NCBI RefSeq assembly: GCF_964204865.1
Contig: NC_135250.1
Span: 14,322,001-14,386,000, forward strand
Direction: 5' to 3'
Length of the DNA stretch: 64,000 bases
From: Styela clava
Lineage: Eukaryota
Below are positions 1-63,286 of the stretch, one piece after another (position 1 is the first letter of the stretch; each line of letters begins with the position of its first letter). Under the pieces are notes generated by a model, which had not been told where the DNA came from, made no database searches, and saw nothing but the letters and a program-made list of their open reading frames with translations. The position numbers and the translations under genes were made by a program.

Positions 1-3000
1 ATTGAATAATCCAGAGCATTTGATTGCAATGTTTTTGACTCTAAAACAGTAATCAAATCTTTCAAAGCGGCGAATGCTATTCAAAGTATTTGTGGTTACA
101 TCCAAATTTTGCCAAAGTGCCGTACATTTACTTTTCTTTAAGGCACTCATGTTATTATAATTTTTCAAAGACTGTCCCTGTTTTATAGTCCATTTTTTGT
201 TACTAAATAGACTATTTTCAACATAATGTTCTAAAAGAACAATTGGGTCGGTATTTGCCTTAGGCTATATATACAGCCATACTCAGATATATATTCACAA
301 CCAGCTTGAGAAATCGCCGTCTAGCGAAAAATACAATCTTAAACCACTGAAAATTTTAGAGCAATTGGGTCAGTAATTAAGAAAAGCAATTTTTTTCATA
401 ACGGCAGGAAGAATAAAAAAATAAAGAACAAGAACAACACGATAACAAAAAGACTCGTAGGTCACTCCGTGTCTAATAAAGCGTTCCTATGATTTAGTTC
501 ACTTTTGCTGCCTTCTCGCGGTAATGAAACTGATCTCCCGTTTTTTTTATTTGAGTGATCTATGTTGAACACACGCGAATCGGAACTAAGAGGATTTGAA
601 AAAAATTGTCTTCCGTAAATTGACTTTTCAATAAGGGAATAAACAATATTCAAAGCAATTGACTATTCAGCAATTTGGAACATTGGATTTCCTAGTCATT
701 GGACAAGAAGTGGACATATGTATCATTCTGAATTGCTGTTGTTTCTGAGTTAAAAATGCTTTTTTTTTTCAAAAAGAACATCAGTTGCTTTAAAATTTAC
801 AGCAGATAAATGGAGACGAGTTTTCGAGAACGCCATTGATTTAATTTGTTGTTAATTATTCGTTGTCGCTTCTACTCCCTCTTTAAATTTTGCGGAGTAT
901 AAAAATTGATCCAGCTTGTGGTATTTTGACCATCGTGTTCATATATTTTTCGCCTTGTTCTCTCTTTTAATACATTTCAAAATAAAATAACATCATTTCA
1001 ATACTAAAGATGTGCTAATCCGAAACGGTGAGGGAATGAGGTTGAAATTTCAATGATGATCAAGATGATGGTTTTGACGATTTTCAGTAAATGGATATGA
1101 AAAAAAAAATAATCCTATATTTAACATTTGATGTCATGTCAACATTTTGAGCAAAGTTATACTATAAGGTGAAATGATATTGTTGGATCATAGCACAAAT
1201 TTGTTGACGTCATTAAACGAAAAGTTGTTATACTTTGAACAGCTATGTTTTACAGACTAATGTTTGCTCATGTATTAGCCAGCCCAGTAAACGCCCATTT
1301 TATTCTATGAATATTTTTTTCCTGCTCCGTCGGCGACAGCTGAATATATATGTTTCAACAAATCCGCTTGAAGCGGTCTTATAGCCATATACTTGAACAT
1401 CAAGAATACTTTGCATGAACATAAAATTTAGTACATCGTTGATTAAACCTAACATCTTCACATTCCTGATAACTTGATATTCATTTACTTAGAATATAAA
1501 TTTGATATATCCAACCGAACATGATTTGCTTCATCAATCTTGAGCACCAACAGATACCAAGGATCCTATATTTGCATGAAGAAGATATGGGATGAGGCAT
1601 CAAATATAGAATGTGAATGCCAATAGGAAAATGCATGACCATCTTTACTGCTGAAATATTTGAAATAATAAATATATATATAATTTTAAATTCAATATAT
1701 TCAGGTGTTTTGGTTATGTACATCTGGTATAAAAACTTATCGAGCCGTTGAGACGACGCCACCAGCACTTGATGTAACTAACAGTTTCAGGAATGAGAGA
1801 TCGCCATCTTCTCTTCAAAGCACACGTCGTATTTTGTATTGTTTACTTATATATATGCAATCTAGTGAACAGAATTCATTTAAGTTGGAATTGCAAGTCA
1901 TATGCAAAATTCATGGTTTTGTATGGTGTTCATCATTAGTTATACACTGATTCTTAACACGCAGTGTTGTATCAACTTTGTTTCCACTATATCGTCCTCA
2001 AACTTGCGCATAAATCTCCAATTTTGTCGTTCTCGGTTATGCAAATGACATTCAATTGCGGAGAAGCGCCTATTGTTCGACGCTCAGTTGGTTGTTATTA
2101 CCCTGAAGTATACCACTTTCGGATACAGCTGAACAAATATTTTGAATTTATGCAAATTTTCCAAAATTGCGTTGACGTAATTTTGGACATGAGTGGTAAG
2201 TTTATAGAAATATATAAAAATTGATCATTGTTCAACACCTTAGTTATAAGAATGTTTGTCATCTTACGAAAGTAAAGGCGTGTTTTGAGCAATAATCTTT
2301 TTTTAAGCGCTTTGTATAACTTACGATTGGTCAAACCATTAGAACGCGACACAACTGACATATTGATATTTTAAATATTGCCAGGAAATAAACATTTTCA
2401 TACGCGTCACTTCATTAAATCTATTATTTATAAGGCTATTTCAGAATTGAACTTGGCAAACTGAAAATCATGTCGGGTTATTCAAGCAATCAGACATTTA
2501 AAAAAATATTTTGCGAAAACGTTTTCATTGTTTTATTTTTAGTCTTGATATTTCAATGCTAAAATGATTTATAATTAAATTTTGATTACATCTCATTCCA
2601 AAGCGTTATATTTTGGAATAAGCGATCACGATCAATAAATACACTCTGGAGTTATTCGGTGCTTCCCCTGAAGCGAGGATCCAGTAACGAGAATTTTCAT
2701 ACATGCATAAAACCGCGAAGTTTATACAAATGTTTTCATTTAAAAAGTTTTGTGTTCATTCTATTCAACTCTTAAATCAGTGAGAAAAATACAATGAGAA
2801 AACAAACCTTTTGCAACCTTTCAATGTGGAAACAAAGTGATTTGACGTACGACGAATGTCATAAGATATTGAGCCGATTGGGAATACCTTTGAACAGGTA
2901 TGTTGTACTGTTAATATTTTATTTTCATAGTCTATCTTAAAACATAGATGAACAATGCCGGTAAGACATTTCAGGCAAAAGTTACCTGAAACACCTCATT

Positions 3001-6000
3001 TGTAAAAAGTTTGCATATGTATATATATATATTTTCAAAGACCAATGGAAATTCTTTCTAAACCAGGTAGGTTCTAAAGACCAACAAGAAAGAGTGTTGT
3101 GCCTTGATTTGTAATGTGTCAAATCCACTCTTCGATAAAAATATATTTGTCAAACTCAAATTACTGTAGCCAATGGGGTTAATTGATTGCCAATGGAAGC
3201 ACGGTGGACCTACTCGATAAAGTGTACCTTATTCTCTTTTATTTCACTCATACTTATATATGTGTTGCAAATTCAGTTATGAAAACGATAAAGAAGAATT
3301 TACATTGTTAACTAGTATCAAATATACTGAAGGTTTTTAATTTTAAATTATGAAATATTTAAAGACATTATTAAAATAGATTTAATTTGGAATTATCTTA
3401 TGTGCATTTTTATTATAAATTTATGCGATGCGTGAAATTGAAGCAAATATCTAATGTTTTTTTTTTTTTTGAGGGGAAACTTCATCAAATACAGTTTTGG
3501 TATTCATTGCTAAAGAAGATCTGTTAGTTAATTCATACACAACAGGCATTTATAGAATATTTATATCAAAACTAGAACCATTTTGAATGCGATTTTCATA
3601 TTTAAACCTTCAATAAAGTCAATGAAAATTTATCGATATTTTTTGTAAAACTGGAATCATTTTTTGTGTTTATTGTCATTTTAAATCTTTGTCGTAAACA
3701 CAGCAGTCCAACATTTCATTTCAATGGGACAGGCTGTTAGTCGGTATAGAGAAATAAATATATGGTGCACATCTGCATCATTACGATTTTATTGTGCGTC
3801 AATATTTTTTATTTTGTTTTTGTTGAGAATGGTTCTGTTTTCGAAAGATCTCTTTGTGACCCTGTGTTTGCGATTACAATAAACAGCGGAACTACCGACA
3901 CCAAGGAATTTGTAGCGTACACCCCCGAAACTTTACATACGATAACAATAAATTCGAGTAACGCCTATTTAACGCCCACTGCTATGGTGTAAAAGTATAG
4001 AAAAAGAAATAGAAAAATATGAAATGCAATAAATGAATTAGCACTGATTCATTGGCGCTTTTCATTGAACCTTCCTATCGTTTATATTTTAACTACTGTA
4101 TTTTACAACGTATCACTTTTCATGAGTGCGAGGTATCCATTATTTAATGTAAAATTAGAATATCAAATCTGGAAAGACAATGCGTGAAATGCTGTTGTAG
4201 TTTGAATACCGAATTATTACTGTAGGGCATGGAAACATTTCTCTCATGAAATTCGGTAAAAGTGAGTTTTTTTTTCAATATTGCACCAATAGTTGACTTG
4301 TTGTTGCAATACTTGATGGTGCCTGAATTCCTTACGACGACCTATCGTCGAAAGGTTCCGTATTTCGCGATTGTTTTAATTTTGACAGGGAATGTTATTT
4401 ATCAAGATTTGTAAGGACTGAACAAGGGATTATCCCAAATTTTTCCTATTGTGATAAAAACAAAGCCATAACAATAGCTGTAAAGTAGGGATCACGCGCG
4501 CTTCTGTTTCTTACGACATTCGAAAGTTTAATGCTGAATATATCTGGCATCGCAAGCTTTTTCTTCTTACCTTTTATCTGCACAAATGGTATTATTTCTA
4601 GCAATTCTACACGGAAATTACAAGAAAAAACTTATTCCCATTATCCAATGTTTGATAGATAAAAAGCAGCTTGACTCCTGTTTATTGCTAAATATTTTGC
4701 CCCGTGCTGGCTTCGGAATTAATAATTTAGTATAGCAATCGAAATTTAAAATTGGTGAAACAAATATAAATGAGTAAAGCGTAACATTGTTCCATTTCGC
4801 TTGCTGTTTCACTGATGAAGGTATTAATAAAGTTCGCGATCGCGCACGTTCTTTTCCTGGAATTAGAAAATCTTGGAAAATATATTTTCTTTCACGTCAA
4901 AAATACGAGATCAGGTCTGCGAGCATTTTTTGAGCGGCAAAACCAGGGAGTGCACCAAGTCAAAATTGAGGTACAGCGTATCGTGCAGAATAATTGTAAT
5001 CAAATCAGTCTTTTGTCAATAATTCCATTTTTAGACGAGACATTTCTCCTATAATCTTTTATTCGACGCGATTAAATGCCAGCCAAACAAAAACTTTTTC
5101 TTATTTAAGCAGAGTTATGCATGATTTCTATGGTATTACGCCAGATACAGATTACATTCTCGTGTAATGATATCACCGACATGAATTGGACTACTGCTCA
5201 TGTTTGGACTATTGAAACTGCCATTTGCCTTGCCTATTAGTGCGCTACTGAGAGCCTCCGAAAATGACAATATTGGGTTTTTATGGTGTACGTAATATTC
5301 AAATGGCAATTGTAGGGAGGGATTGAAGTAAATGACATGAGAATATTTTTTCACAAAGACTTTTATTTGAAAAGAGGCAATATTGGTATTGTAGAGAGGT
5401 AAATTCATGATAACGGAAATTTGTTGGAAAGTTTATCATTTAAACAATGCGAAACGCTCATCACTTTATTGGACAAATCCCCTTGTTTGTCCCAAAATTC
5501 TAATCTGCCTCAAAGTTGAACGTGTTTCATAGAGTTAGGCACTGACAATCTCGAAATTATTTTAGTTCGATTCCATAAAGAAAGTTGCTTATAATAGTTT
5601 TTTTTACAAGCGCAAATCACTTAAAGCACGATTTTTTGTTCTGGCCCTTGTCTACTCGTAAATAGGGATGGTGAAATCGACTACGTCATTTGAATGAAGA
5701 CAATTTTTTTGAAAAAGCAGTTGGTTTGCAATCCAAGATTATCAAACCCGGTAAATTCCCTCAAACTTCGATGGGTAGATTGAAATAAGTTTTAATCTTT
5801 CTTAAAATCTACCACGCGATATAAAGAACATGTTTTGCCAAACTTGAACCAGAATTCATATTCATATCAGGCTCGAATTATATTGCCCTAGGCTTCATTC
5901 ATCCCAGAAGGGATCGATATATTTATTAATAAAGACAAATGAGCATGGGTTTGTTTATATATGGTTTCAGCTAAGTTGCAGAACCCCATTACACAACGTC

Positions 6001-52851: not shown

Positions 52852-53311
52852 AGGCTATACGGTTTCTTGAACTGAAAAAAAAAAAAAAAATTCAAAAAAT
52901 AGTCATGCAGACTCCGGGTATCACGTTGAATTATTACCTTTTTCTGATTTTAGCTGTACCTGAAAATTTTCACAATTTAAAAACAGTCATACTTTCACCT
53001 AATGCCATACCATTCGCGTAAAAGATCAAGAATGGTATTATAAGTTTATTCCATTCATAGTCTACCTAACTTACACAACATATATCAGTACATACTTTAT
53101 CAAAAATCTTTGAATCAAAATACTGAAATAAAATGAGGAAAAACGCATATGATTAAGTCACCAAGAGTCAAAACTTGATAGACAAAAAAAATGTAGACAA
53201 TAACAACCAACTGATTGAGTTTTTTAGGCGAGGCTAACTTGCCCAGTTCCTATAAAACGGCACCGTACCTCTTACAGTTTTTCTTGACGGTATTTTGAAT
53301 AAATGCTTCCT

Positions 53312-53653
53312 GGCGCGGCGGTGTGGCTCAACGGGCTAAGCGATAGGAATACGCTCGCCACCGCACCTCTAATTACTCTGCGTGGGTTCGCAGGTTCGAA
53401 TCCCATGCAGGGATGGTTATGTGCGAGAGGATTGCTGGACTCCTCGCCGTCGTTGGGTGGTTCACGTAACCGCTGGTCGGTTACGGCTTCCTCCACCACC
53501 AAGTCCATGCTTCCCAAAACAAACAATATAACTAATCTCATACCCGACTTGGAATGGTAACCGGACGAGAGGCCGTGGTTCGCCATATGGATAAGCCGTC
53601 TTATCGGCTTTCCTCTTCCCCGGGATAAATATGTAAATCCTATCATATCCTAT
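53312..53653 (+). mobile_element. tRNA-derived SINE
   Basis: A box TGGCTCAACGG (53324-53334), B box GGTTCGAATCC (53393-53403), GC-rich body, tail of ATCCT-like repeats. Confidence 0.8.
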
Positions 53654-54268
53654 TTGTTGAGCGTCCGTAACATCCGGGGATACAGCAGTACTTTCCTCCA
53701 ACACTCCCTGCTCACTTGTATTCCATAATTAAAGATAAAACGTCCAAGTTAATACCCTGCACCTAACTGAAAACACCAGTCTACTAGCATTACTCTGGCA
53801 CTACTCCAACTGCTAATCCCCTAGTGTTGGGTGCGATGGCATTGTCAAGTGCGTCCCGAACGCTTAGCTGCCCAGCGCCATTAGCTTTTCTATTGCAAAA
53901 TATACCAAGTGCAGTTTCAAGTATTTTATGGCGTCTGAAGCTGCCGCAAAACCATGGTGGAATTCCTAAATCGTGGCCGCTATTGCCAAACCCATGGCGA
54001 CTGACTTTTTAGCTGACACAAACCAATGGTGAAATTGAAAACTAAAGGCGAATGAAATTTTTCTGCCGTTACCACGGCATGCCGGCTGTAATGGCAGGGC
54101 TGTCCCTGATAGTAAAATCTGGTACATGACTTCGTGAATATACCGGTAATAGCGCCATGACGCATGACCACGGCAAAGGCTGCCAAACTGGTTTATTCCT
54201 TATCAAACCAACGACTAATCTACTAAGCAAACTATAGAGAATTATAACCCTCTGTTGACCCTCTATAA

Positions 54269-54561
54269 CAGGGGTGGGCAACATACGGCTCGCGGGCCGT
54301 ACCCGGGCAAGATTTGGACCGACCCGCTGACTGTACAGTATTACACATTTAGTACATTATGAAAATTCATTATGGGTTTTTTGGTCTCTATTTTTTGTAA
54401 AGTTTAAACTTTACTTTAAACGCGATTTATATTTTTCCTTCTTGCATTAGCGAATAAATATGTGATTAAGATATTCAATACTATTCATGTAATAATCCGG
54501 CCCACCGAGGACTTCATTTTCCCACATCTGGCCCGCCGACTAGAGAAGTTGCCCACCCCTG
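54269..54561. mobile_element. 293-bp hAT MITE
   Basis: Perfect TIR CAGGGGTGGGCAAC / GTTGCCCACCCCTG; perfect 8-bp TSD CTCTATAA (54261-54268, 54562-54569). Confidence 0.95.
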
Positions 54562-55745
54562 CTCTATAATCAAACTATGCACCAAGAAAAATTTGATTAA
54601 ACACAAAAATTAATGGCATATTACCTTACATGGGTACTGTATAGATAGGACCAATGACATTTAATGTCATTGATAGGACGTTCTCGGCTCAATGTCACCA
54701 ATGGACGCTTGCGTACTGCAGTTGATTTTTGCTGGAGCGGTTTTCAAAAATTCTACTGCGTAAAACTAGCCTTAGTTAGCTTTATGTAAAGAGTAAGCGT
54801 CAAATATCCTGAAAATATATTCAGAATCATATTCGTAATAAACTAAAATCTGGTAAATGACTTTGTGAATATACGATAATAGCGCCATGACCACAGCAAG
54901 AGCTGGCATTGGTTCGTTCAGAGCCATTATATCTAATGGCTCTGATTATATAATGGCTCTTGTTCGTTCGTGACGGGAGCTGCCATGAAGTGGTAAGAAC
55001 CGCGCCTCAAATATACCGTACCGGTATGATGTTTGAGTGTTTTGCAAGTTGGCAGTTGCAAACTGGTTTATTCCTTATCAAACCAACGACTAATCTAATT
55101 ATCAAACTATGGCCGACCGTGATCAAACTACGCAACAAGAAATTATAATTAAACAAAAAAATTAGTGGCATATTACTATAGAGGGTCAACATAGAGATAC
55201 CACCTCTGTGTGACGTCATAGTTCCGCATGAGTAAAGAGGTATGACCTTCTCAGCGCTTAACTTTGCCGCCAAATATTTTGACCGAAGGTTTTTTGTTGC
55301 CCCAAGCTGCGGGCATTTTTAAGTTATTTTGTAACGCTTCGTATATATATATATATATGAGTAGATTAGCTATAAAAATCACGCTAGCTTTCGTTTCGAT
55401 ATTTATGTCACAGACTGTGAACTTGACCTAATACGGTACGATAACCTGGCACCGGTACGGTAACTGCTGAACTGACAGCAGTAGCAATAATATTATTCAG
55501 ATATTGCTATTTCATTTTCGGTAATTTTGCTTTCAGGCCCGTACCACAGTATTGTAGACAACTTAGCTCTAATCTATCTACCGGTACATATAGTTCTAAT
55601 CGTAGGTGCCGTACTTGCACAGGAATCCTTTATTTCAACTTATGTGAAGAGGGAACACAGTTTGGAGAAGCAAACCAAGTATTTGTGGTATCGATACGTG
55701 AGTATTGTTATATATATATATTAAGTGATTTAAATATTTTTTACT

Positions 55746-58700
55746 ATGCCAGCTGGAACGCATTGTGCAGTGCCGGGATGCAGCTACTCCTATGTCAAGT
55801 CTAGGAAAGCAGGACAGTCTGTAAAAACACTATTTTCTGTTCTTCGGCCCGATCTGGCAAAGACTCCTCAGGAAAGGAAACACCGGGAGGGGTTGTCCAA
55901 TTTTTTATTGGCGATGAGAGACAGTAGCAGAGGAGATAACATCAAGGCTATGCTGCACAAAGAAACGTAATGTACTTATCTAGGCATATTAAACATATAA
56001 ACAAATTTATACAGCCTATAATAGTATAATTGAGTAATTGCGTTCAAAAATTCTGCTGTGTGGATTATCAGAAACCCGGAATATTTGTTAATTTTTCTTA
56101 TCGTATATTTATCGTTATAATTTGCTAAGCCTACCAAGCCATCTAATTTGTTTTGCATTTAATTCAAATTTTGCACAAAATGACCATAGCTAGCTTTTGA
56201 CATCTTCATATTGTTATACCAATATACTTTACCTTTTTATATTTAGGGCCTCAATATGTGAAGACCATTTCCTGGGAACCGATATACTTCGGCATGGGAA
56301 AAAAAGCTCTTTAAGACTCGGAGCAGTTCCATGCAGAAAAATTCCCAGGAGTTCAGCTGTGTACCAGGAAAAAACAAGACCTCTCCCAGCTGTGCGTGAA
56401 CCACTGCCGGAAAAAATTCGATATCGATCTACTAGGAGTTTGGTCAGTGCCACTTCATACTTGTCGCAATCTATGAAAGGTATGCATCTGTAGAATTTTT
56501 TTTTGCTTGTTTAGCAAATTTTGATTGAACTTTTTATACAGATAAGTGGGCTTTGTATGAGCACCGAGGAAAATTTATTGCAGAGATGAGAAAGGATGAT
56601 TACTGCGTGCCTAGTATAAGGTAGTTGTTTTTAAACAGAAGTTATCAATTATAGTTTGGTTTTCAACTTGCAGAGAATAGGATAACATTTTAGTTTTCAA
56701 TTATTTTGTTGCTGTGTCATTTGAGTAGTAATTGAGTTTGACAGCATGAATTGTAAGTTCAGCAGTTTTTCATTGTAGCGCAAGTTTGTCGTTAGGGAAT
56801 ATTTTTAGATGGCAGAATATTAAAACTCATACTAGGAGGCTACAGGATTGTACAGAGTAAATAGCTAAGATAAATTGCAAATACCAAATCACAAATATAC
56901 CCATGAGCCATATGACATACCAAATTTTATCTAACAACTTATCAATCTAAAACAAACTGAAATAATTTTACACAATGATGAAAAAAGAGTTGAGTATGGA
57001 GAAGATGGTGCAATGCAAAGTGCTCATTTTTCTGGCTGGAAAGTCGAGATTGCAAAGCTAGGAGTTGACAGATGTGATACTCTGAATTCTGTTTTAGGTA
57101 TACATTTTCTTTTGACAAGTTCACCTTTGTTTTATTCTGTAACTCAAATTTGTGTTATCCATTTAAGACCAATTAGGCAAATTGGAGTTGTGTTGCGGTA
57201 TTGATCGGCGGGATGGCAGTACATTGGTTCACCCAGTTTTGTCGTGGGGAGGTGACAAGATTAATATCAAAAATATATATCGGTCAACATCATGTAGCAC
57301 AATTGGTATGTTAGTAAAAAATCGCTGTTCGACTGTCTCGAGAGCATATATATGATTGCAGGATATTTTTAGTGGATGTGTCAATTGGATGCCCAATGTG
57401 CAGCAGCTGCATGTCAGAACAGTTCAAAAATGACGAGGAAGAACACCATCCAAGCCAGGTCATGTTGCAAGTTGATGATACTGTGCATGATATGATCAAG
57501 GTCATGTTTACTTTTTGTTTTATTTCACGATCAAATAATTTTTAATGTACTAGACTCAAGAGATTAATTGTATGACTGACTTGTGAATATTTTCACAGGC
57601 CACTTTCGCTTCTGAAAGTTCCATCTTGAATACTTGGCAGCAAATGTTTTTTGGTCAGCAGCTTGCCAACTCCAATGCTCACCCCTCTTCACGTCGGTAC
57701 CATCCAGATGTGATTCGTTGGGCTATGGAACTCTATTGCAGATCGCCTTCTGCCTATGATCATCTGCGAACAAGTCAGGTGCTGACTCTGCCTTCCCCAA
57801 GCACTTTGAATCGCTACAGGTAAATGTAATGCTTCTGACAATTGTTGGGGTGTACTATGGTGAATTTAAATTAACTTTGATAACCATTTGGCCATGTTGT
57901 TTTCTTTCAGTCTATTCAAAAAAAATATTTTGTCTATTATCTGTCTACTTATTATATCATACATTGGTCAGTGACTCGCGATTGCTGATTTATTTTTTAT
58001 TTTTGCAGAAATGTCATTCCACCACAATCTGGGATTAACAAACTGGCATTGAAAGAAATGGAGAGAGTCATCAAAGACAAGGGTTCATTGATTGGATTTG
58101 TTGCTCTCGATGAGATGAAGGGTAAGCTCACTTTAATTTTTATTTACAATCTTACATCATTGTCATATATATGAATCTCTGATACAGTTAGAGAAAATCT
58201 GGTCTGTCGTAACGGCAAATTGATTGGTTTCGTGGACAAAGAAATGGCAAGGAATGGCAATAATGACCAGCTTGCTTCACACATTTTAGGTAAGTTGTTA
58301 CTGGGGTTTTACTACGGTAGACTTTTTATGTAACGCAGTATTAATGTTCTACATGTTTCTTCAGTATTCTACGTTAGAACCGTGAAGCGAGATCTGTCGA
58401 TTCCTTTGGCGTGGTATGCAACCCGTAACTCCCCAGCCTCCAAGCTTTGTCGGGTGTTTTGGGAACTTTTAATTGAATGTGAGAGCCGAAGCGTAAAGAT
58501 CCTTGCTGTAATCGCAGATGGTCACAGTACCAACCGTCGCTTTTTCCAACTTTTAAGTGGCAACTTGGAATTGCCTTGTGATGGTGTATTGTTTGCTCCT
58601 AATATATGCGACTCTGACAGGAACATATACCTATGTTCTGATCCATCACATTTGATCAAGGTAATAAAAGAAATGGGCAAATGGCATTGTATAATGTTTA

Positions 58701-59995
58701 CCATGATGCGTTAATTTTCAACAGTCTTTTTTTCATTTGTTCAGACTGTTCGAAACTCGTTATATGCATCAAAAGTTGGTGGGAAGAAGCATATGCGCCG
58801 AGGTGGCCAGGACATTGTGTGGAGGCATATTAAAGATCTTTATATGCAGGAATCTGTTCAGGTCCTTGGCCGTACCAGACTGAGTCCATCACATGTAGAG
58901 TTAACACCATATAGTAAGGTAAGCTAATAGTCTAATTGTGTTGGTTTGGCCGCACGACACGCTGATGAAATCCCTGAAATGGACTTATTTCAACTAAAAT
59001 TTTTGATTCGCTGCCAATGCCCTTGACTGTGGTAACAGGATTTTCAATAACTAATTTTTTTTAATACAGAGTGATTTGGGAAAATCTTTTTTATTTTCAG
59101 ATGAAAGTCAATCTTGCAACTGATGTGCTGAGCTGGAACGTCGGCCAATGTTTAAAAACAATGAATGGGACGAATGGAACTGCCAAATTTGTTTTGATGT
59201 TTGCAAAGTAAGTCGGTCATTTTTTAAAAGAAAAAAAATTCCCTATTTTTGTGTCAGTTATGCATGTATCGTCCATTCAGATGGTATGAAATTGTCAACT
59301 GTTCCTGTAATTGCCCCATACGATGCGTCGACGATGATAGACTGTCTTGGTTGAAGAATGGCTTCATAGGTTCACTGTTGGAGTGGGAAGTGAGTTGTAT
59401 TTTTTGTATGGTTTTATTCAATATGATCACAATCTCTAAAAAGATCTACAACCATAGCATTTGAAGATTATATTATATTACTATGCCATAACATTGGAAA
59501 TAAGAGATGTCATTTTGGGGTTGGCTATTGTTATTTTCATGCATTATTTATTCTTGAAAACAATTATAGAATGAGCATGGTGGAGATGAAAAGAGTTTTC
59601 TGGCTCGCCCAACCTTAGAGGGACTGAAATTCACCACACACAATTTCATAGAGATGTGCAAATACCTTCTGGCAAATGGTTTGGAATATGTGTCTTTGCA
59701 CTGCTTTAATCAGGATGTTTTGGAAGCTTTCTTCGGAAATTTGGTGAGATTTTTTGGGGGGGCTGAACTGTATGGGTATCTATCTAGCCATGTATATATC
59801 TAATCCGCAGCATCACATTCATAGAGACAACTTGGATCTAGATCAAGCAATCCAGACATATCTCAAGTATCCTATGGAATAACCCAAATTTCGCAAAGAA
59901 AGATCATCAAGAAGGTCAAAGGTGGTAATACAACCTATGGGAAAGCGAATGCCTGGACAGACATATGTGAACATCCATTGCCATCAAAAAAATGA
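55746..59995 (+). CDS. P-element/THAP9-family transposase, 15 exons, ~791 aa, no stops or frameshifts in the model
   Basis: Exons: 55746-55966, 56247-56479, 56542-56620, 56988-57097 (weak acceptor), 57168-57305, 57373-57500, 57599-57819, 58009-58121, 58188-58289, 58365-58660, 58745-58918, 59101-59207, 59281-59389, 59570-59743, 59825-59995 (2376 nt). THAP C2CH (CAVPGC...CEDHF..GAVP), HTH (RYHPDVIRW..SPSAYDHLR..LPSPSTL), catalytic ALDEMK, IADG and NQDVLEAFFGNLRQ, D(2)H motif DPSHLIKTVRN, and the insertion-domain motif KMKVNLA. Confidence 0.92.
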
Positions 59996-60662
59996 ACATT
60001 AGCATAATTTCGGCTGCAATCATGACTTACGATATTTAGAACTTGCAGATTATGCTTTTTCTCTTATAATATCGTGGATTGTTGCCGTAAAATCAATATT
60101 GGTCTTTTGTTCGAAACATTTGACCATACACACAAGGCTTTGGAGTCGGAAGTCCAACATTTTTTTATATCGTAGCTGTGCGCAAAATTTGGTTGAATTA
60201 ATCAGAGTCAAATTTTTATCGTAATATTCCATTCAAATTTATCTAAAAAACTAAGCATTGAATTGACTAGAGTATTTTCAATAGATAATTAAATTCAGTA
60301 AGACTCAATAAAGTTTTTGTAAAAGTTTGGTTTGTTGTAGCCTGTTTCGAACTCTTCGTCAAATTTGAATTATGGTCTAAATTAACTGGACTTCACAGCC
60401 TGCTCGGAAACTTATTAGTGCTGTTTTATAAATAGCATGGCAATCAAATAACAAGTTTGGATGGCAGAAGATTAAAGTGGATGATGCAGTTTATTGCCTG
60501 GTGTATTTGAGACTTTGTGTATTTTAGTCGAATCAAATTTAATTGGGTGCTTTTTGTTTGGTACATAAGAGAAACACTGAGATAACCCGGCCCACACAAT
60601 AATTAAACAATAGACTCAATCAAGTACCTCAAGCTTTTTATTTTAGCAGTTACTAAAAAAAA

Positions 60663-61589
60663 TTAATTGAAAATATGACTGTTGCTGATTCTTGCCAAAT
60701 CTGGTCTAGTACCTCTAGAACAGACACCAGACCCCGGGGCCCTCTTTTTGAATAATTTGTAAAACAACTTTCTTGCATATGCATGTGAAAGCACTCTTAT
60801 AAATAAACTCGTTACATATCTTGCTATCTTGACACTTTCTTTTTGTCCATTGCAATAGGGTAGCATGTCATTGACATTGGTATCAAAGTTTTGAGACTCT
60901 TCTAACTTATTTTCAATTCCTGCAAAGTCTATAAGATGTGGCTGTTTAGCACATTCCTGCGCTACTTTTTGGTAAGCCTCTTCTAATAGTAACAAGTATG
61001 CTTGAGTTGGATACTTTAGCTTTCCCTCCGGGAACTGCAGTAATGGGATTGTTGAATGGGAGGGCCTTTTTGCACAGAGGGAGTCCAGGGCTTTTGCTGA
61101 TTCTGCAAATTTAATATACCCCTTTTTCAGGGTATATCCTGCAATGTACTCAATTATGCCTTTTTCATAACTGTCGACCTGTTCGCAAAATAAATTCTTC
61201 GGGGTGGCAAATGTTACATTGTCATCCAGTGGCTTGAGAATGTAGTTGGTTATTTCCAACATGGCTTTCGCTGTAAAAATTTTTTCCGTATGCCCAGCGA
61301 ACATCTTTGGCGAGAGGTGTGAGCATTGAGAGAATTTTAGCATGACTTGGTCAGCTCCTTTCTCTCTGGCAAAGACTTGCATGAGGGCTTTTATAATATT
61401 CAAGCCTTCAAATGTTAGCTCTAAGTCGGATCTTACGTTATTGACCAATTTTATAACTTGATCATCGGAAACTTCCGGAGTTCTTCTATTTTTTACTTGT
61501 GTTGATGCTTTCGAATGAGGAAATTCTTCGATTTTATCGAAATCCTCAAAAAGGAACTCAACAATTCCATGTATCTCGTTAGTAGCCAT
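60663..61589 (-). CDS. Intronless 308-aa accessory ORF inside the P element; C-terminal half resembles the P/THAP9 transposase C-terminal domain
   Basis: Longest ORF in the window, ATG to stop, lying within the TIRs. Contains EKGIIEYIAGYTLKK...GKLKYPT..YLLLLEEAY...YVTSLFIRVLSHAYARK. Confidence 0.85.
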   Translation of the reverse strand: MATNEIHGIVEFLFEDFDKIEEFPHSKASTQVKNRRTPEVSDDQVIKLVNNVRSDLELTFEGLNIIKALMQVFAREKGADQVMLKFSQCSHLSPKMFAGHTEKIFTAKAMLEITNYILKPLDDNVTFATPKNLFCEQVDSYEKGIIEYIAGYTLKKGYIKFAESAKALDSLCAKRPSHSTIPLLQFPEGKLKYPTQAYLLLLEEAYQKVAQECAKQPHLIDFAGIENKLEESQNFDTNVNDMLPYCNGQKESVKIARYVTSLFIRVLSHAYARKLFYKLFKKRAPGSGVCSRGTRPDLARISNSHIFN

Positions 61590-63286
61590 TACAGATGAAT
61601 AACAGTAAGTAAGATAACTTATAAGTTACTGAGTAATAAACTAGAGCTAGGCTGGGTATGTGAAAAATAATTAATTACAGAGATTGTGCAAATTGACAAT
61701 CTAAACGTGGTAATGCTTTTGACTTTTAATTAATCAACACTCCTTTTTTTTCTCACTAATTAGGCTATGTGGCTGATTTCAGACAGATAACGGTTTCAGC
61801 ATCGATTTAGTATGAGAATAAATGGTAAGATAGCAGTCCAATAAAAATAGAGTAAAATACAGTGGTTTTCAATCACAGAGGCCAATACAATATTGATAGT
61901 ATACAGTAAAGAAACATATTTATTAATTCTGAAAGCAAACTACCGAATCATGACCCTGAACTGATGGATTGGCTGGATACAAACCCGCGACATCTTGACA
62001 CCAAACGGCCAACGCTGAAATAGATCGCGCTGAGGAAAACATCGCATTTCCTACTTCCGTACCTCTTTACTCATGTGGAACGACCTTTGAACCCGCGAGT
62101 GAATTCTCTATTATCATTCTCTGTGATATTACATTACCTTACATGGGTATAGGACGTTCTCCGTTCAACGTCACCAAAGGACGCTTCCGTCGGGAACAAA
62201 TTGCCTTACCGGTACTGCAGTTGATTTTTGCTGGAGCGGTTTTCAAAAATTCTTATGCGGAAAACTAGCCTCAGTTAGCTTTATGTAAAGAGCAAGCGTT
62301 CAAATAAATTCTGAAAATATATATAGAATCATATTTACCATAGAATCATATTCGTGAAAAAAAATATCAGTGATAATCCACAAAAGATATGAATAGGCGG
62401 TACCGGTACCGTATCACCAATGAACATGAAGAGAAATTTAAAATGAGAGCGAGATCTGAATGCTTTGATACCGTAACAGTGTACTTACGTCTGTACGTAG
62501 TTTAGTGTAGTCTACTTGTTGTGTAAGTCTGAAAATTTTCAAATTTTTTGTGTTAGTACTGTGCTGGTAAATTGAATTGTTTTGCCTACCGGTACCCATA
62601 CTGCCATATGATGATTTGTAGTGAGAATATTTCGATGATATGATGCTGGTATTTCTCACTGTAATGTGGTACTAGTAGTAGTTTTGAACATGTATAACTG
62701 CCCAGTGTTGGACCTAGCGCCACTTCTTCTCAAATATGGTATGTTTTGATACCTGGATACCTGTACAGTAAACTTATACAGTATTTCTACTGTCATTTGC
62801 TATTGTCATTTTTTTATGTAACTATTGTACATTCGTGATTTCAATAATAACTTGAAAATTTGATAATCCTAACCAACTGGATAATATGTAGCCTATTCAA
62901 ATGAATTGGATACTACTGACTGACTGATGCAAAATCCATGGAACATACAGATACGGTATATGATAATGATGCTAATTATATTAGGTGGTCACAATTAATG
63001 TAATTGGATGAATATTGTTTCTTTGTTTCAACACATAATGAAAAAGGGAATTTAAGAGTAAGCTGTCACTGTCTGAGGAAAGGGATGTGTTTTGAAATAG
63101 TTGAGTGTGCAAACATCACTTCTCATATGTTTTCTCGAGTTGAATTGTACCAAATAGGAATAGAACTAGAATTTATATTAGATCATCAATTCATATTGTT
63201 ATTTGACCAAATAATCTATTAATTCAGATCTTATTAATCATTGTTATATTTGCTACTGTGTCTGTAAAATCTCCTACAGTCCTAGG

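What the first reader, a model, noticed from the sequence alone, without database searches (positions are those of the whole stretch)
54233..54267. 35-bp scar made of both ends of the neighbouring P family: a candidate excision footprint
Seen: in TATAGAGAATTATAA-CCCTC-TGTTGACCCTCTATA, the right 15 nt are the exact reverse complement of the element's left end (TATAGAGGGTCAACA), and the left 15 nt match the other end (CACAGAGAATGATAA) at 12/15. After removing the hAT MITE, it is flanked by a degenerate 7-bp duplication AGCAAAC/ATCAAAC. Known: P transposase makes 17-nt staggered cuts, so donor-site repair typically leaves ~15-17 bp of each TIR. Inference: a related element inserted here in the opposite orientation and excised, suggesting this family uses the same staggered chemistry and that the asymmetric ends are a family trait, not decay.
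Basis: partly seen in the sequence, partly recalled or inferred. Interest (0 to 1): 0.75.

Follow-up and report, generated by a model that had tools for sequence, protein, structure and literature searches.

The report
Excision footprint of a P-type transposon
The 35-base stretch is the scar left when a P-type jumping gene cut itself out, one of at least 18 such scars in this genome, and together they show that this distant family cuts its ends with the same long stagger as the fruit-fly P element.

Summary
The 35-mer (54233-54267) occurs once in the 377-Mb assembly, so it is not a mobile mini-MITE. A search for left end, 0-30 nt, right end found 18 places against 0 for the reversed control. 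They carry 13 different junctions, 21-47 bp long. None has a 31-60 nt gap. Of the 17 other places, 13 have a perfect 7-bp target duplication and 2 have one mismatch. Retained ends run from 10 to 16 nt and never clearly more. Junctions show 1-3 nt microhomology or inserts copied from the left end, including the CCCTC of this scar. The parent family has 14 left and 16 right ends, conserved and unlike each other. It makes 7-bp duplications (R-T-n-n-n-A-Y) and matches P-transposase domain models in order. One caveat: the flanking heptamer pair also stands in the local paralogue around an unrelated 14-mer, so the duplication is weak evidence at this site. A hAT-like MITE later inserted into the scar's xTATAGAG, as at 4 other ends. 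This is a new member of a known kind. Other notes of this scan propose footprints elsewhere, none for this family.

The parts
54226..54232 (-). Heptamer AGCAAAC, the target-duplication copy on the right-end side. In element orientation it reads GTTTGCT, 1 mismatch to its partner.
   Evidence: position 6 (A in 24 of 25 family duplications) is the mismatched one
54233..54247 (-). 15 nt derived from the element's right end, with 3 substitutions (TTATAATTCTCTATA against TTATCATTCTCTGTG in element orientation)
54248..54252 (-). 5-nt filler CCCTC. It reads GAGGG in element orientation, identical to positions 5-9 of the left end, and is read as a templated insert.
   Evidence: sequence; the same motif stands at the junctions of L070 and L066
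54253..54267 (-). 15 nt of the element's left end, an exact match
54269..54561 (.). 293-bp hAT-like MITE with an 8-bp duplication CTCTATAA (54261-54268 and 54562-54569). It inserted into the scar's last 7 nt plus 1 nt of the P-type duplication.
54569..54575 (-). Heptamer ATCAAAC, the second target-duplication copy. In element orientation it reads GTTTGAT, which fits the family's target pattern.
55177..62125 (+). 6949-bp member of the parent P-type family, 910 bp from the scar and in the opposite orientation. Its 7-bp duplication ATATTAC stands at 55170-55176 and 62126-62132.
55101..55128 (.). Paralogous site in copy B: ATCAAAC-TATGGCCGACCGTG-ATCAAAC. It has the same heptamer pair around an unrelated and unexplained 14-mer.
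54645..54679 (.). A second, unrelated footprint-like insert in copy A: the 21-bp palindrome CAATGACATTTAATGTCATTG between two ATAGGAC heptamers. Copy B has a single ATAGGAC here.

Best explanation
A member of the neighbouring P-superfamily transposon family once sat at this spot, in the orientation opposite to the present neighbour, and then excised.

Inferred mechanism. The transposase cut one strand at each element tip and the other strand about 16-17 nt inside. Each flank therefore kept a long 3' single-stranded tail made of element-end sequence. The cell joined the two tails by microhomology-mediated, synthesis-dependent end joining. Fifteen nt of each tail survived, and 5 nt (GAGGG in element orientation) were copied from positions 5-9 of the left tail before the final join.

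Later events. The scar picked up three substitutions in its right-end half and one in a flanking heptamer. A hAT-like MITE then inserted into its terminal xTATAGAG.

Shown: the structure, its uniqueness, the genome-wide set of sister footprints with 7-bp duplications, and the cap on retained length. Inferred: the cleavage chemistry, the repair pathway and the order of events.
For: - The 35-mer is unique in G000 within 3 mismatches.
- Left end, 0-30 nt, right end gives 18 places against 0 for the reversed control.
- Of the 17 other places, 12 have a perfect 7-bp duplication as they stand, and 1 more does after removal of a MITE. Two have one mismatch.
- Retained lengths, left end: 16 nt at 6 places, 15 at 1, 14 at 2, 13 at 1, 12 at 2, 10 at 6. 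Right end: 16 at 1, 15 at 9, 13 at 3, 12 at 3, 11 at 2.
- Nothing was found with a 31-60 nt gap.
- The relaxed search (7 nt per end, GTNNNAN flanks) gave 8 places. All were already known and none retained fewer than 10 nt.
- Junctions overlap by 1-3 nt (T, A, AT, TCA) or carry fillers. Three fillers copy the left end: L066, L070 and the window.
- Parent family: 12 of 13 end pairs have a perfect 7-bp duplication. T stands at position 2 in 25 of 25 and A at position 6 in 24 of 25. The scar's GTTTGAT fits.
- P-transposase domain models match exon-sized ORFs in canonical order.
- Decayed versions of the commonest junction exist: 9 further places with 2-3 mismatches, control 0. Substitutions in an old scar are therefore expected.
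- Passages I read state a 17-nt staggered cleavage for the Drosophila P element (PMC7776569, PMC10983969). PMC2895639 lists experimental junctions that keep up to 17 nt per end, with microhomology or templated inserts.
Against: - The flanking heptamer pair also stands in paralogue B around an unrelated, unique 14-mer. At this site the 'duplication' may be partly pre-existing, and a 21-bp difference between A and B is then left unexplained.
- All three substitutions fall in one half. Two of them turn CACAGAG into TATAGAG, which is symmetric with the other end. No extant right end has this form.
- L070 can be read as keeping 20 nt of the left end, which would exceed a 17-nt tail. The alternative reading, 16 nt plus a templated AGAGGG, is an interpretation.
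- L067 has no duplication after MITE removal, and L069 could not be resolved.
- Reads laid on another copy showed no fresh footprint.
- The cleavage positions are inferred from scars, not measured.
- Counts from the genome search are lower bounds.
Confidence: 0.9

Rival explanations
1. The scar is an extreme internal-deletion derivative. After excision the gap was refilled from a sister or homologous copy, synthesis aborted almost at once on both sides, and the nascent ends were joined. On this view the 15+15 nt come from repair synthesis and not from transposase-made tails.
For: PMC2895639 (passages) describes incomplete repair synthesis followed by end joining as common after P excision in wild-type flies. 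Internally deleted copies of this family exist: 1074, 4678 and 5541 bp between paired ends.
Against: Aborted synthesis should give a spread of retained lengths. Instead retention stops at 16 nt. No structure has a 31-60 nt gap, and the next shortest derivative found is 1074 bp.
Confidence: 0.06
2. The 35-mer is a real footprint, but the flanking heptamers are not the duplication made by that insertion. They are an older internal repeat of the host sequence, since ATCAAAC occurs three times within 52 bp in copy B. The element sat at one of them, and 21 bp (one heptamer plus the 14-mer) were lost separately in copy A.
For: Copy B has ATCAAAC at 55077, 55101 and 55122. The 14-mer between the last two is unique in the genome, and its 1-mismatch matches (17) are at control level (12). 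Copies A and B differ by several other insertions and deletions.
Against: It needs an extra deletion that ends exactly at a heptamer boundary. The host segment has only these two copies in the genome, so the ancestral state cannot be polarised.
Confidence: 0.3
3. The scar is the donor site of the neighbouring 6949-bp copy, which hopped 910 bp away and flipped orientation.
For: A review passage says P elements transpose preferentially to nearby sites (PMC7776569). Footprints and copies cluster: 10 pairs lie within 1 Mb against 3.2 expected, P = 0.003 in 5000 simulations.
Against: The neighbour is young: 99.4-99.7% identical to five other copies over 1500 nt at each end, with canonical ends. The scar carries 3 changes in 30 nt and 1 in 7, and has since received a MITE.
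Confidence: 0.05
4. The 35-mer is a mobile mini-MITE, or a chance similarity.
For: One junction (a 24-mer) recurs at 4 places exactly and at 1 with one change. Another (a 21-mer) recurs at 2 places.
Against: The 35-mer itself is unique. There are 13 junction types at 18 places. The recurring ones join at microhomologies (T, TCA) and have different flanks. The reversed-pattern controls gave 0.
Confidence: 0.01

Closest known systems
Excision footprints of the Drosophila melanogaster P element (17-nt 3' tails, end joining)
   Same: The target duplication is kept on both sides. Up to about 16-17 nt of each element end is retained in inverted arrangement. Junctions show short microhomology or inserts templated from the adjacent tail. 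Passages read: PMC7776569 and PMC2895639.
   Different: - The duplication here is 7 bp, not 8.
- The ends are imperfect repeats (18 of 28 positions alike, read), not perfect 31-bp repeats.
- The maximum retained is 16, not 17.
- These scars are natural and fixed in an assembly, not recovered from an assay.
- Single exons gave no direct sequence match to any solved structure at E up to 1, so the family is distant from the fly P transposase.
Galileo and 1360, the 7-bp-duplication branch of the P superfamily in Drosophila
   Same: A 7-bp target duplication with a near-palindromic GT...AC consensus. Galileo is given as GTANTAC or GTATTAC (PMC4168063, passages). Here G stands at position 1 in 16 of 25, T at position 2 in 25 of 25, A at position 6 in 24 of 25 and C at position 7 in 12 of 25.
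   Different: Galileo has very long Foldback-like inverted repeats, while this family has short imperfect ones. Relatedness of the transposases was not tested here. The word 'footprint' does not occur in PMC4168063, and I did not search further for Galileo footprints.
Zebrafish Pdre2 / THAP9
   Same: A P-superfamily element outside insects, with short inverted repeats and internally deleted copies (PMC10983969, passages).
   Different: Pdre2 has 13-bp perfect repeats and 8-bp duplications. The passages returned for my search terms give no cleavage stagger or repair junctions for it. I did not read the whole text.

Membership tests
P-type excision footprint | Both element ends present, tip outwards, in one short stretch | tested here: met
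   Left end 15 of 15, right end 12 of 15, correct strands, 5 nt between them
P-type excision footprint | Flanked by the family's target duplication | tested here: inconclusive
   The flanks agree at 6 of 7 after MITE removal and fit the target pattern. The same heptamer pair stands in paralogue B without the scar.
P-type excision footprint | Retained length per end does not exceed the stagger (17 nt or less) | tested here: met
   15 + 15 here. Across 18 places the maximum is 16, with one ambiguous case, L070.
P-type excision footprint | Junction made anew at each event: variable, with microhomology or a templated filler | tested here: met
   13 junction types at 18 places. The filler GAGGG equals left-end positions 5-9.
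P-type excision footprint | An occupied allele or orthologue at the same site, or excision observed directly | not testable with these tools
   No relative genome is offered for G000 (text). Reads laid on another copy showed only an empty form and no new scar.
P superfamily transposon (the parent element) | THAP DNA-binding domain at the N-terminus | tested here: inconclusive
   Only the C-terminal half of the model matched one exon-sized ORF: E 0.06, 14.6 bits against a cut-off of 23.9.
P superfamily transposon (the parent element) | P-transposase HTH, RNase H-like core and GTP-binding insertion domain | tested here: met
   PF12017: 28.7 bits, above the cut-off of 23. PF21787: 24.3 bits against 24.6. 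PF21788: E 0.0058. PF21789: E 0.073. All lie in canonical order on the + strand. Only the first passes its curated cut-off.
P superfamily transposon (the parent element) | Target duplication of 7-8 bp | tested here: met
   12 of 13 end pairs have a perfect 7-bp duplication
Mobile mini-MITE | Many near-identical copies with a fixed junction at unrelated sites | tested here: not met
   1 place in 377 Mb within 3 mismatches
hAT-like MITE (the 293-bp insert) | 8-bp target duplication and short inverted termini starting CAG | tested here: met
   CTCTATAA on both sides and 14-nt perfect termini. That these features mark hAT is recalled. No link to a hAT transposase was tested.

The most novel reading that the evidence does not exclude
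Natural scars alone reveal where a distant P-superfamily transposase cuts the second strand: about 16-17 nt inside each end. This family makes 7-bp duplications at GT...AC-type targets, like Galileo and 1360. The unusually long stagger would then be an old, shared trait of the whole superfamily and not a peculiarity of the fly P element. In addition, the retained xTATAGAG tip acts as a homing site for several hAT-like MITE families (5 of 32 left-end sites), so one transposon's scar seeds another's insertion.
Probability: 0.55. Interest if true: 0.6.

Novelty: new member of a known kind. Interest (0 to 1): 0.5.

Why it matters
The 17-nt stagger is described as a distinguishing feature of the P element transposase (PMC7776569, passage). 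The passages I read give no such measurement for zebrafish Pdre2 or Galileo.

Here a census of fixed scars in one genome gives the same answer for a family that:
- has no direct sequence match to any solved structure,
- has unlike ends,
- makes 7-bp duplications.

The census provides a ready set of at least 18 natural repair junctions for study of end joining in this animal. It shows that the family has excised repeatedly. It also offers a simple way to read cleavage geometry of other cut-and-paste families from assemblies alone.

Tried and rejected
**Paralogues to polarise the site.** The host segment around the scar has only the two local copies. Only the first 165 bp of copy B belong to a dispersed repeat, so this failed.

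**Copy B's 14-mer as a recurrent footprint of a third family.** It is unique, and its 1-mismatch matches (17) are at control level (12). Rejected; it stays unexplained.

**A global alignment of copies A and B.** It was too broken by insertions and deletions to give a meaningful identity figure (one search printed 74%). The ungapped blocks give 88-94%.

**A direct match of two exon-sized ORFs to solved structures.** None at E up to 1.

**Pfam on the 308-aa minus-strand ORF.** No family.

**Fresh excision in reads.** None was seen. The one relevant joint (193 to 5742 of L090) skips the element plus one duplication copy, which is an empty form and not a scar. The flank there has about ten times the depth of the element, so the joined form may come from paralogues of the flank.

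**A paper search for the term CANRG.** No paper held it. My recollection of a P-superfamily terminal motif is therefore not used.

**Not done.** Supplementary files were not opened; the additional files of PMC4168063 may hold Galileo flank data that bear on the comparison.

Full report
**What is in the sequence**

The window reads TATAGAGAATTATAA CCCTC TGTTGACCCTCTATA at 54233-54267.

The right 15 nt are the exact reverse complement of TATAGAGGGTCAACA. With up to 2 mismatches that 15-mer occurs only twice in the window: here, and at 55177-55191. Shuffles gave a mean of 0.10.

The left 15 nt match CACAGAGAATGATAA (minus strand of 62111-62125) at 12 of 15. By itself that is at chance level for a 64-kb window: 4 matches against 3.01 expected. 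The position, 5 nt from the exact half and on the correct strand, is what carries weight.

The two 15-mers are the ends of a 6949-bp element at 55177-62125. Its flanks repeat ATATTAC.

Directly after the 35-mer sits a 293-bp MITE (54269-54561). It has perfect 14-nt inverted termini and a perfect 8-bp duplication CTCTATAA. Without it the 35-mer lies between AGCAAAC and ATCAAAC.

**The parent family**

The assembly (G000, 377 Mb) holds 14 left ends within 3 mismatches of the 28-nt left terminus, and 16 right ends within 3 mismatches of the 30-nt right terminus. Nine of each are exact.

Every left end keeps the left sequence and every right end keeps the right sequence. The two ends agree at only 18 of 28 positions (read). 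The asymmetry is therefore a family trait and not decay of one copy.

Of 13 end pairs, 11 have a perfect 7-bp duplication as they stand. One more (L012/L030) does once a MITE that abuts the left end is removed. One short 1074-bp derivative has none.

Over 25 perfect duplications, counting full copies and footprints together:
- position 2 is T in 25,
- position 6 is A in 24,
- position 1 is G in 16 and A in 7.

Exon-sized ORFs on the + strand match, in canonical order:

| Pfam model | Result |
|---|---|
| THAP (C-terminal half) | E 0.06 |
| P-transposase HTH, PF12017 | E 1.7e-6, above its cut-off |
| RNase H N-terminal domain, PF21787 | E 4.2e-5, 24.3 bits against a cut-off of 24.6 |
| GTP-binding insertion domain, PF21788 | E 0.0058 |
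| RNase H C-terminal domain, PF21789 | E 0.073 |

I searched exon by exon and did not join exons. Two exons gave no direct match to any solved structure, so the family is a distant member.

One cohort of copies is 99.4-99.7% identical over 1500 nt at each end. Others are 82-95% identical. The family has therefore been active for a long time and until recently.

**The decisive test**

The 35-mer itself has one place in the genome within 3 mismatches. It is not a mobile mini-element.

The pattern left end (10 nt), 0-30 nt, right end (10 nt, with R at the two positions that differ in the window) has 18 places. The same pattern read backwards has 0. The stretches are 21-47 bp long and show 13 different junctions.

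The 17 places other than the window divide as follows:
- 12 are flanked by a perfect 7-bp duplication.
- 2 have a duplication with one mismatch (L070, L072).
- 3 have the end of a MITE abutting TATAGAG, as in the window. After MITE removal one of these (L077) has a perfect duplication and one (L067) has none. For the third (L069) the other MITE end lies outside the locus.

Retained lengths:

| Retained nt | 16 | 15 | 14 | 13 | 12 | 11 | 10 |
|---|---|---|---|---|---|---|---|
| Left end (places) | 6 | 1 | 2 | 1 | 2 | 0 | 6 |
| Right end (places) | 1 | 9 | 0 | 3 | 3 | 2 | 0 |

A gap of 31-60 nt gives no place at all.

A relaxed pattern that needs only 7 nt of each end, with GTNNNAN flanks, gives 8 places. 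All were already known and none retains fewer than 10 nt.

The next shortest relative found is the 1074-bp derivative. Retention is thus bounded at 16 nt, with an empty interval above it. That is what tails of fixed length predict, and what random internal deletion does not.

**The junctions**

Eleven of the 18 join with 0-3 nt of overlap. The overlaps are a single T (the 24-mer: 4 places exactly and 1 with one change), A, AT at two places, and TCA (the 21-mer, at two places). The recurring junctions have unrelated flanks. They are therefore repeated outcomes of the same microhomology, not copies of one insert.

Seven have fillers of 1-16 nt:
- L066 carries a 13-nt copy of left-end positions 3-15.
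- L070 carries AGAGGG.
- The window carries GAGGG, which equals left-end positions 5-9.

The window's scar is thus L15 + GAGGG + R15, almost the same product as L070 (L16 + AGAGGG + R15).

This is the picture given for the fly P element. Passages I read describe a 17-nt staggered cleavage (PMC7776569, PMC10983969). PMC2895639 describes junctions after P{wa} excision that keep the 8-bp duplication and up to 17 nt per end, with microhomologies or templated inserts attributed to polymerase theta.

That the same pathway acts here is inference.

**What does not fit neatly**

First, the scar lies in copy A (about 54113-54843) of a local duplication. Copy B (54844-55176 plus 62133 onward) hosts the full element.
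- The blocks shared by A and B are 88-94% identical.
- The segment around the scar has no other copy in the genome.
- At the scar's place copy B reads ATCAAAC TATGGCCGACCGTG ATCAAAC (55101-55128), and a third ATCAAAC stands 24 nt upstream.
- The 14-mer is unique, and its near matches are at control level.

So the heptamer pair may predate the A/B split, or may be an older internal repeat. In either case A and B differ by a further 21 bp that I cannot explain. The duplication is therefore weak evidence at this one site. The case rests on the two ends, the filler, the target pattern and the census.

Second, the three substitutions all lie in the right-end half. Two of them make it TATAGAG, symmetric with the left end, and no extant right end has this form. 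Decay is plausible:
- Nine further places match the common 24-mer junction with 2-3 mismatches, control 0. Their flanks were not examined.
- The scar's 4 changes in 37 nt are of the order of the A/B divergence.

A lost variant is not excluded.

Third, L070 can also be read as keeping 20 nt of the left end.

**Reads**

I therefore laid four coded runs on a 5541-bp copy elsewhere (L090).
- One joint skips the element plus one duplication copy (from 193 to 5742, with 7 letters fitting either side). It appears in one contig each of X2 and X3 and in 2 reads of X8.
- That is an empty form. The flank has about ten times the depth of the element, so it may come from paralogues of the flank.
- No new scar was seen.
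- Contigs of X1, labelled as another organism, carry internal parts of the family with 14 of 17 laid pieces at 99% identity or more.

**Context**

Footprints and copies cluster. Ten pairs lie within 1 Mb against 3.2 expected (P = 0.003), and the scar lies 910 bp from a full copy.

The neighbour is young and the scar looks old, so a direct donor-and-product relation is unlikely. A regional preference or repeated local hops fit better.

The 7-bp duplication and the GT...AC target resemble Galileo (GTANTAC; PMC4168063, passages) more than the 8-bp duplication of the P element.

**Verdict**

The scar is an excision footprint of a P-superfamily family, one of at least 18. The set shows a stagger of about 16-17 nt. 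This is a new member of a known kind, with modest wider interest for the evolution of P-type cleavage geometry.

Noticed in passing
window 54261-54569; L067, L069, L077 (footprints); L012 (full copy): hAT-like MITEs with different termini (CAGGGGTGGGCAAC, CAGTGGTTCTTAAA, CAGGGGGCTCAAAC, CAGGGGTCGGCAAC and others) sit exactly in the 8-mer xTATAGAG at the P-type left end. This holds at 4 of 18 footprints and 1 of 14 full left ends. None sits at a right end. The scar tip looks like a preferred hAT target.
   Followed up: partly
window 54645-54679; L079-L089: A 21-bp palindrome, CAATGACATT-T/A-AATGTCATTG, lies between 7-bp direct repeats, and paralogue B has a single ATAGGAC at that place. The genome has 6 exact places and about 17 places within 2 mismatches. 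Of 11 other loci read, 8 have a perfect 7-bp duplication, and 4 of those lie in one repeat family. It is probably the footprint of a second family that makes 7-bp duplications. Its parent element was not sought.
   Followed up: partly
window 55077-55128: ATCAAAC occurs three times within 52 bp in copy B. Between the last two lies a G+C-rich 14-mer (TATGGCCGACCGTG) that is unique in the genome and unexplained.
   Followed up: partly
window 62126-62137: After the duplication ATATTAC on the right of the full element, copy B has an extra ATTAC that copy A lacks (ATATTAC-ATTAC-CTTACATGG against CATATTAC-CTTACATGG).
   Followed up: no
window 54844-55008: The first 165 bp of copy B belong to a dispersed repeat with at least 70 matches in the genome. 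In copy B it is interrupted by a 42-bp insert (54920-54961), and it is partly deleted in copy A.
   Followed up: no
window 60663-61589 (minus strand): A 308-aa open frame runs convergent to the transposase exons inside the element. It matched no Pfam family at E up to 5.
   Followed up: partly
window 53300-53500: A tRNA-like stretch (GGCGCGGCGGTGTGGCTCAACGG...GGTTCGAATCCC) lies upstream of the duplicated unit and may be a SINE head. I did not examine it.
   Followed up: no
G000 C4:4.07-6.69 Mb and C1:14.38-15.22 Mb: Four footprints lie within 2.6 Mb on C4. Three footprints plus one full copy lie within 0.85 Mb on C1, and two of those footprints are 39 kb apart.
   Followed up: partly
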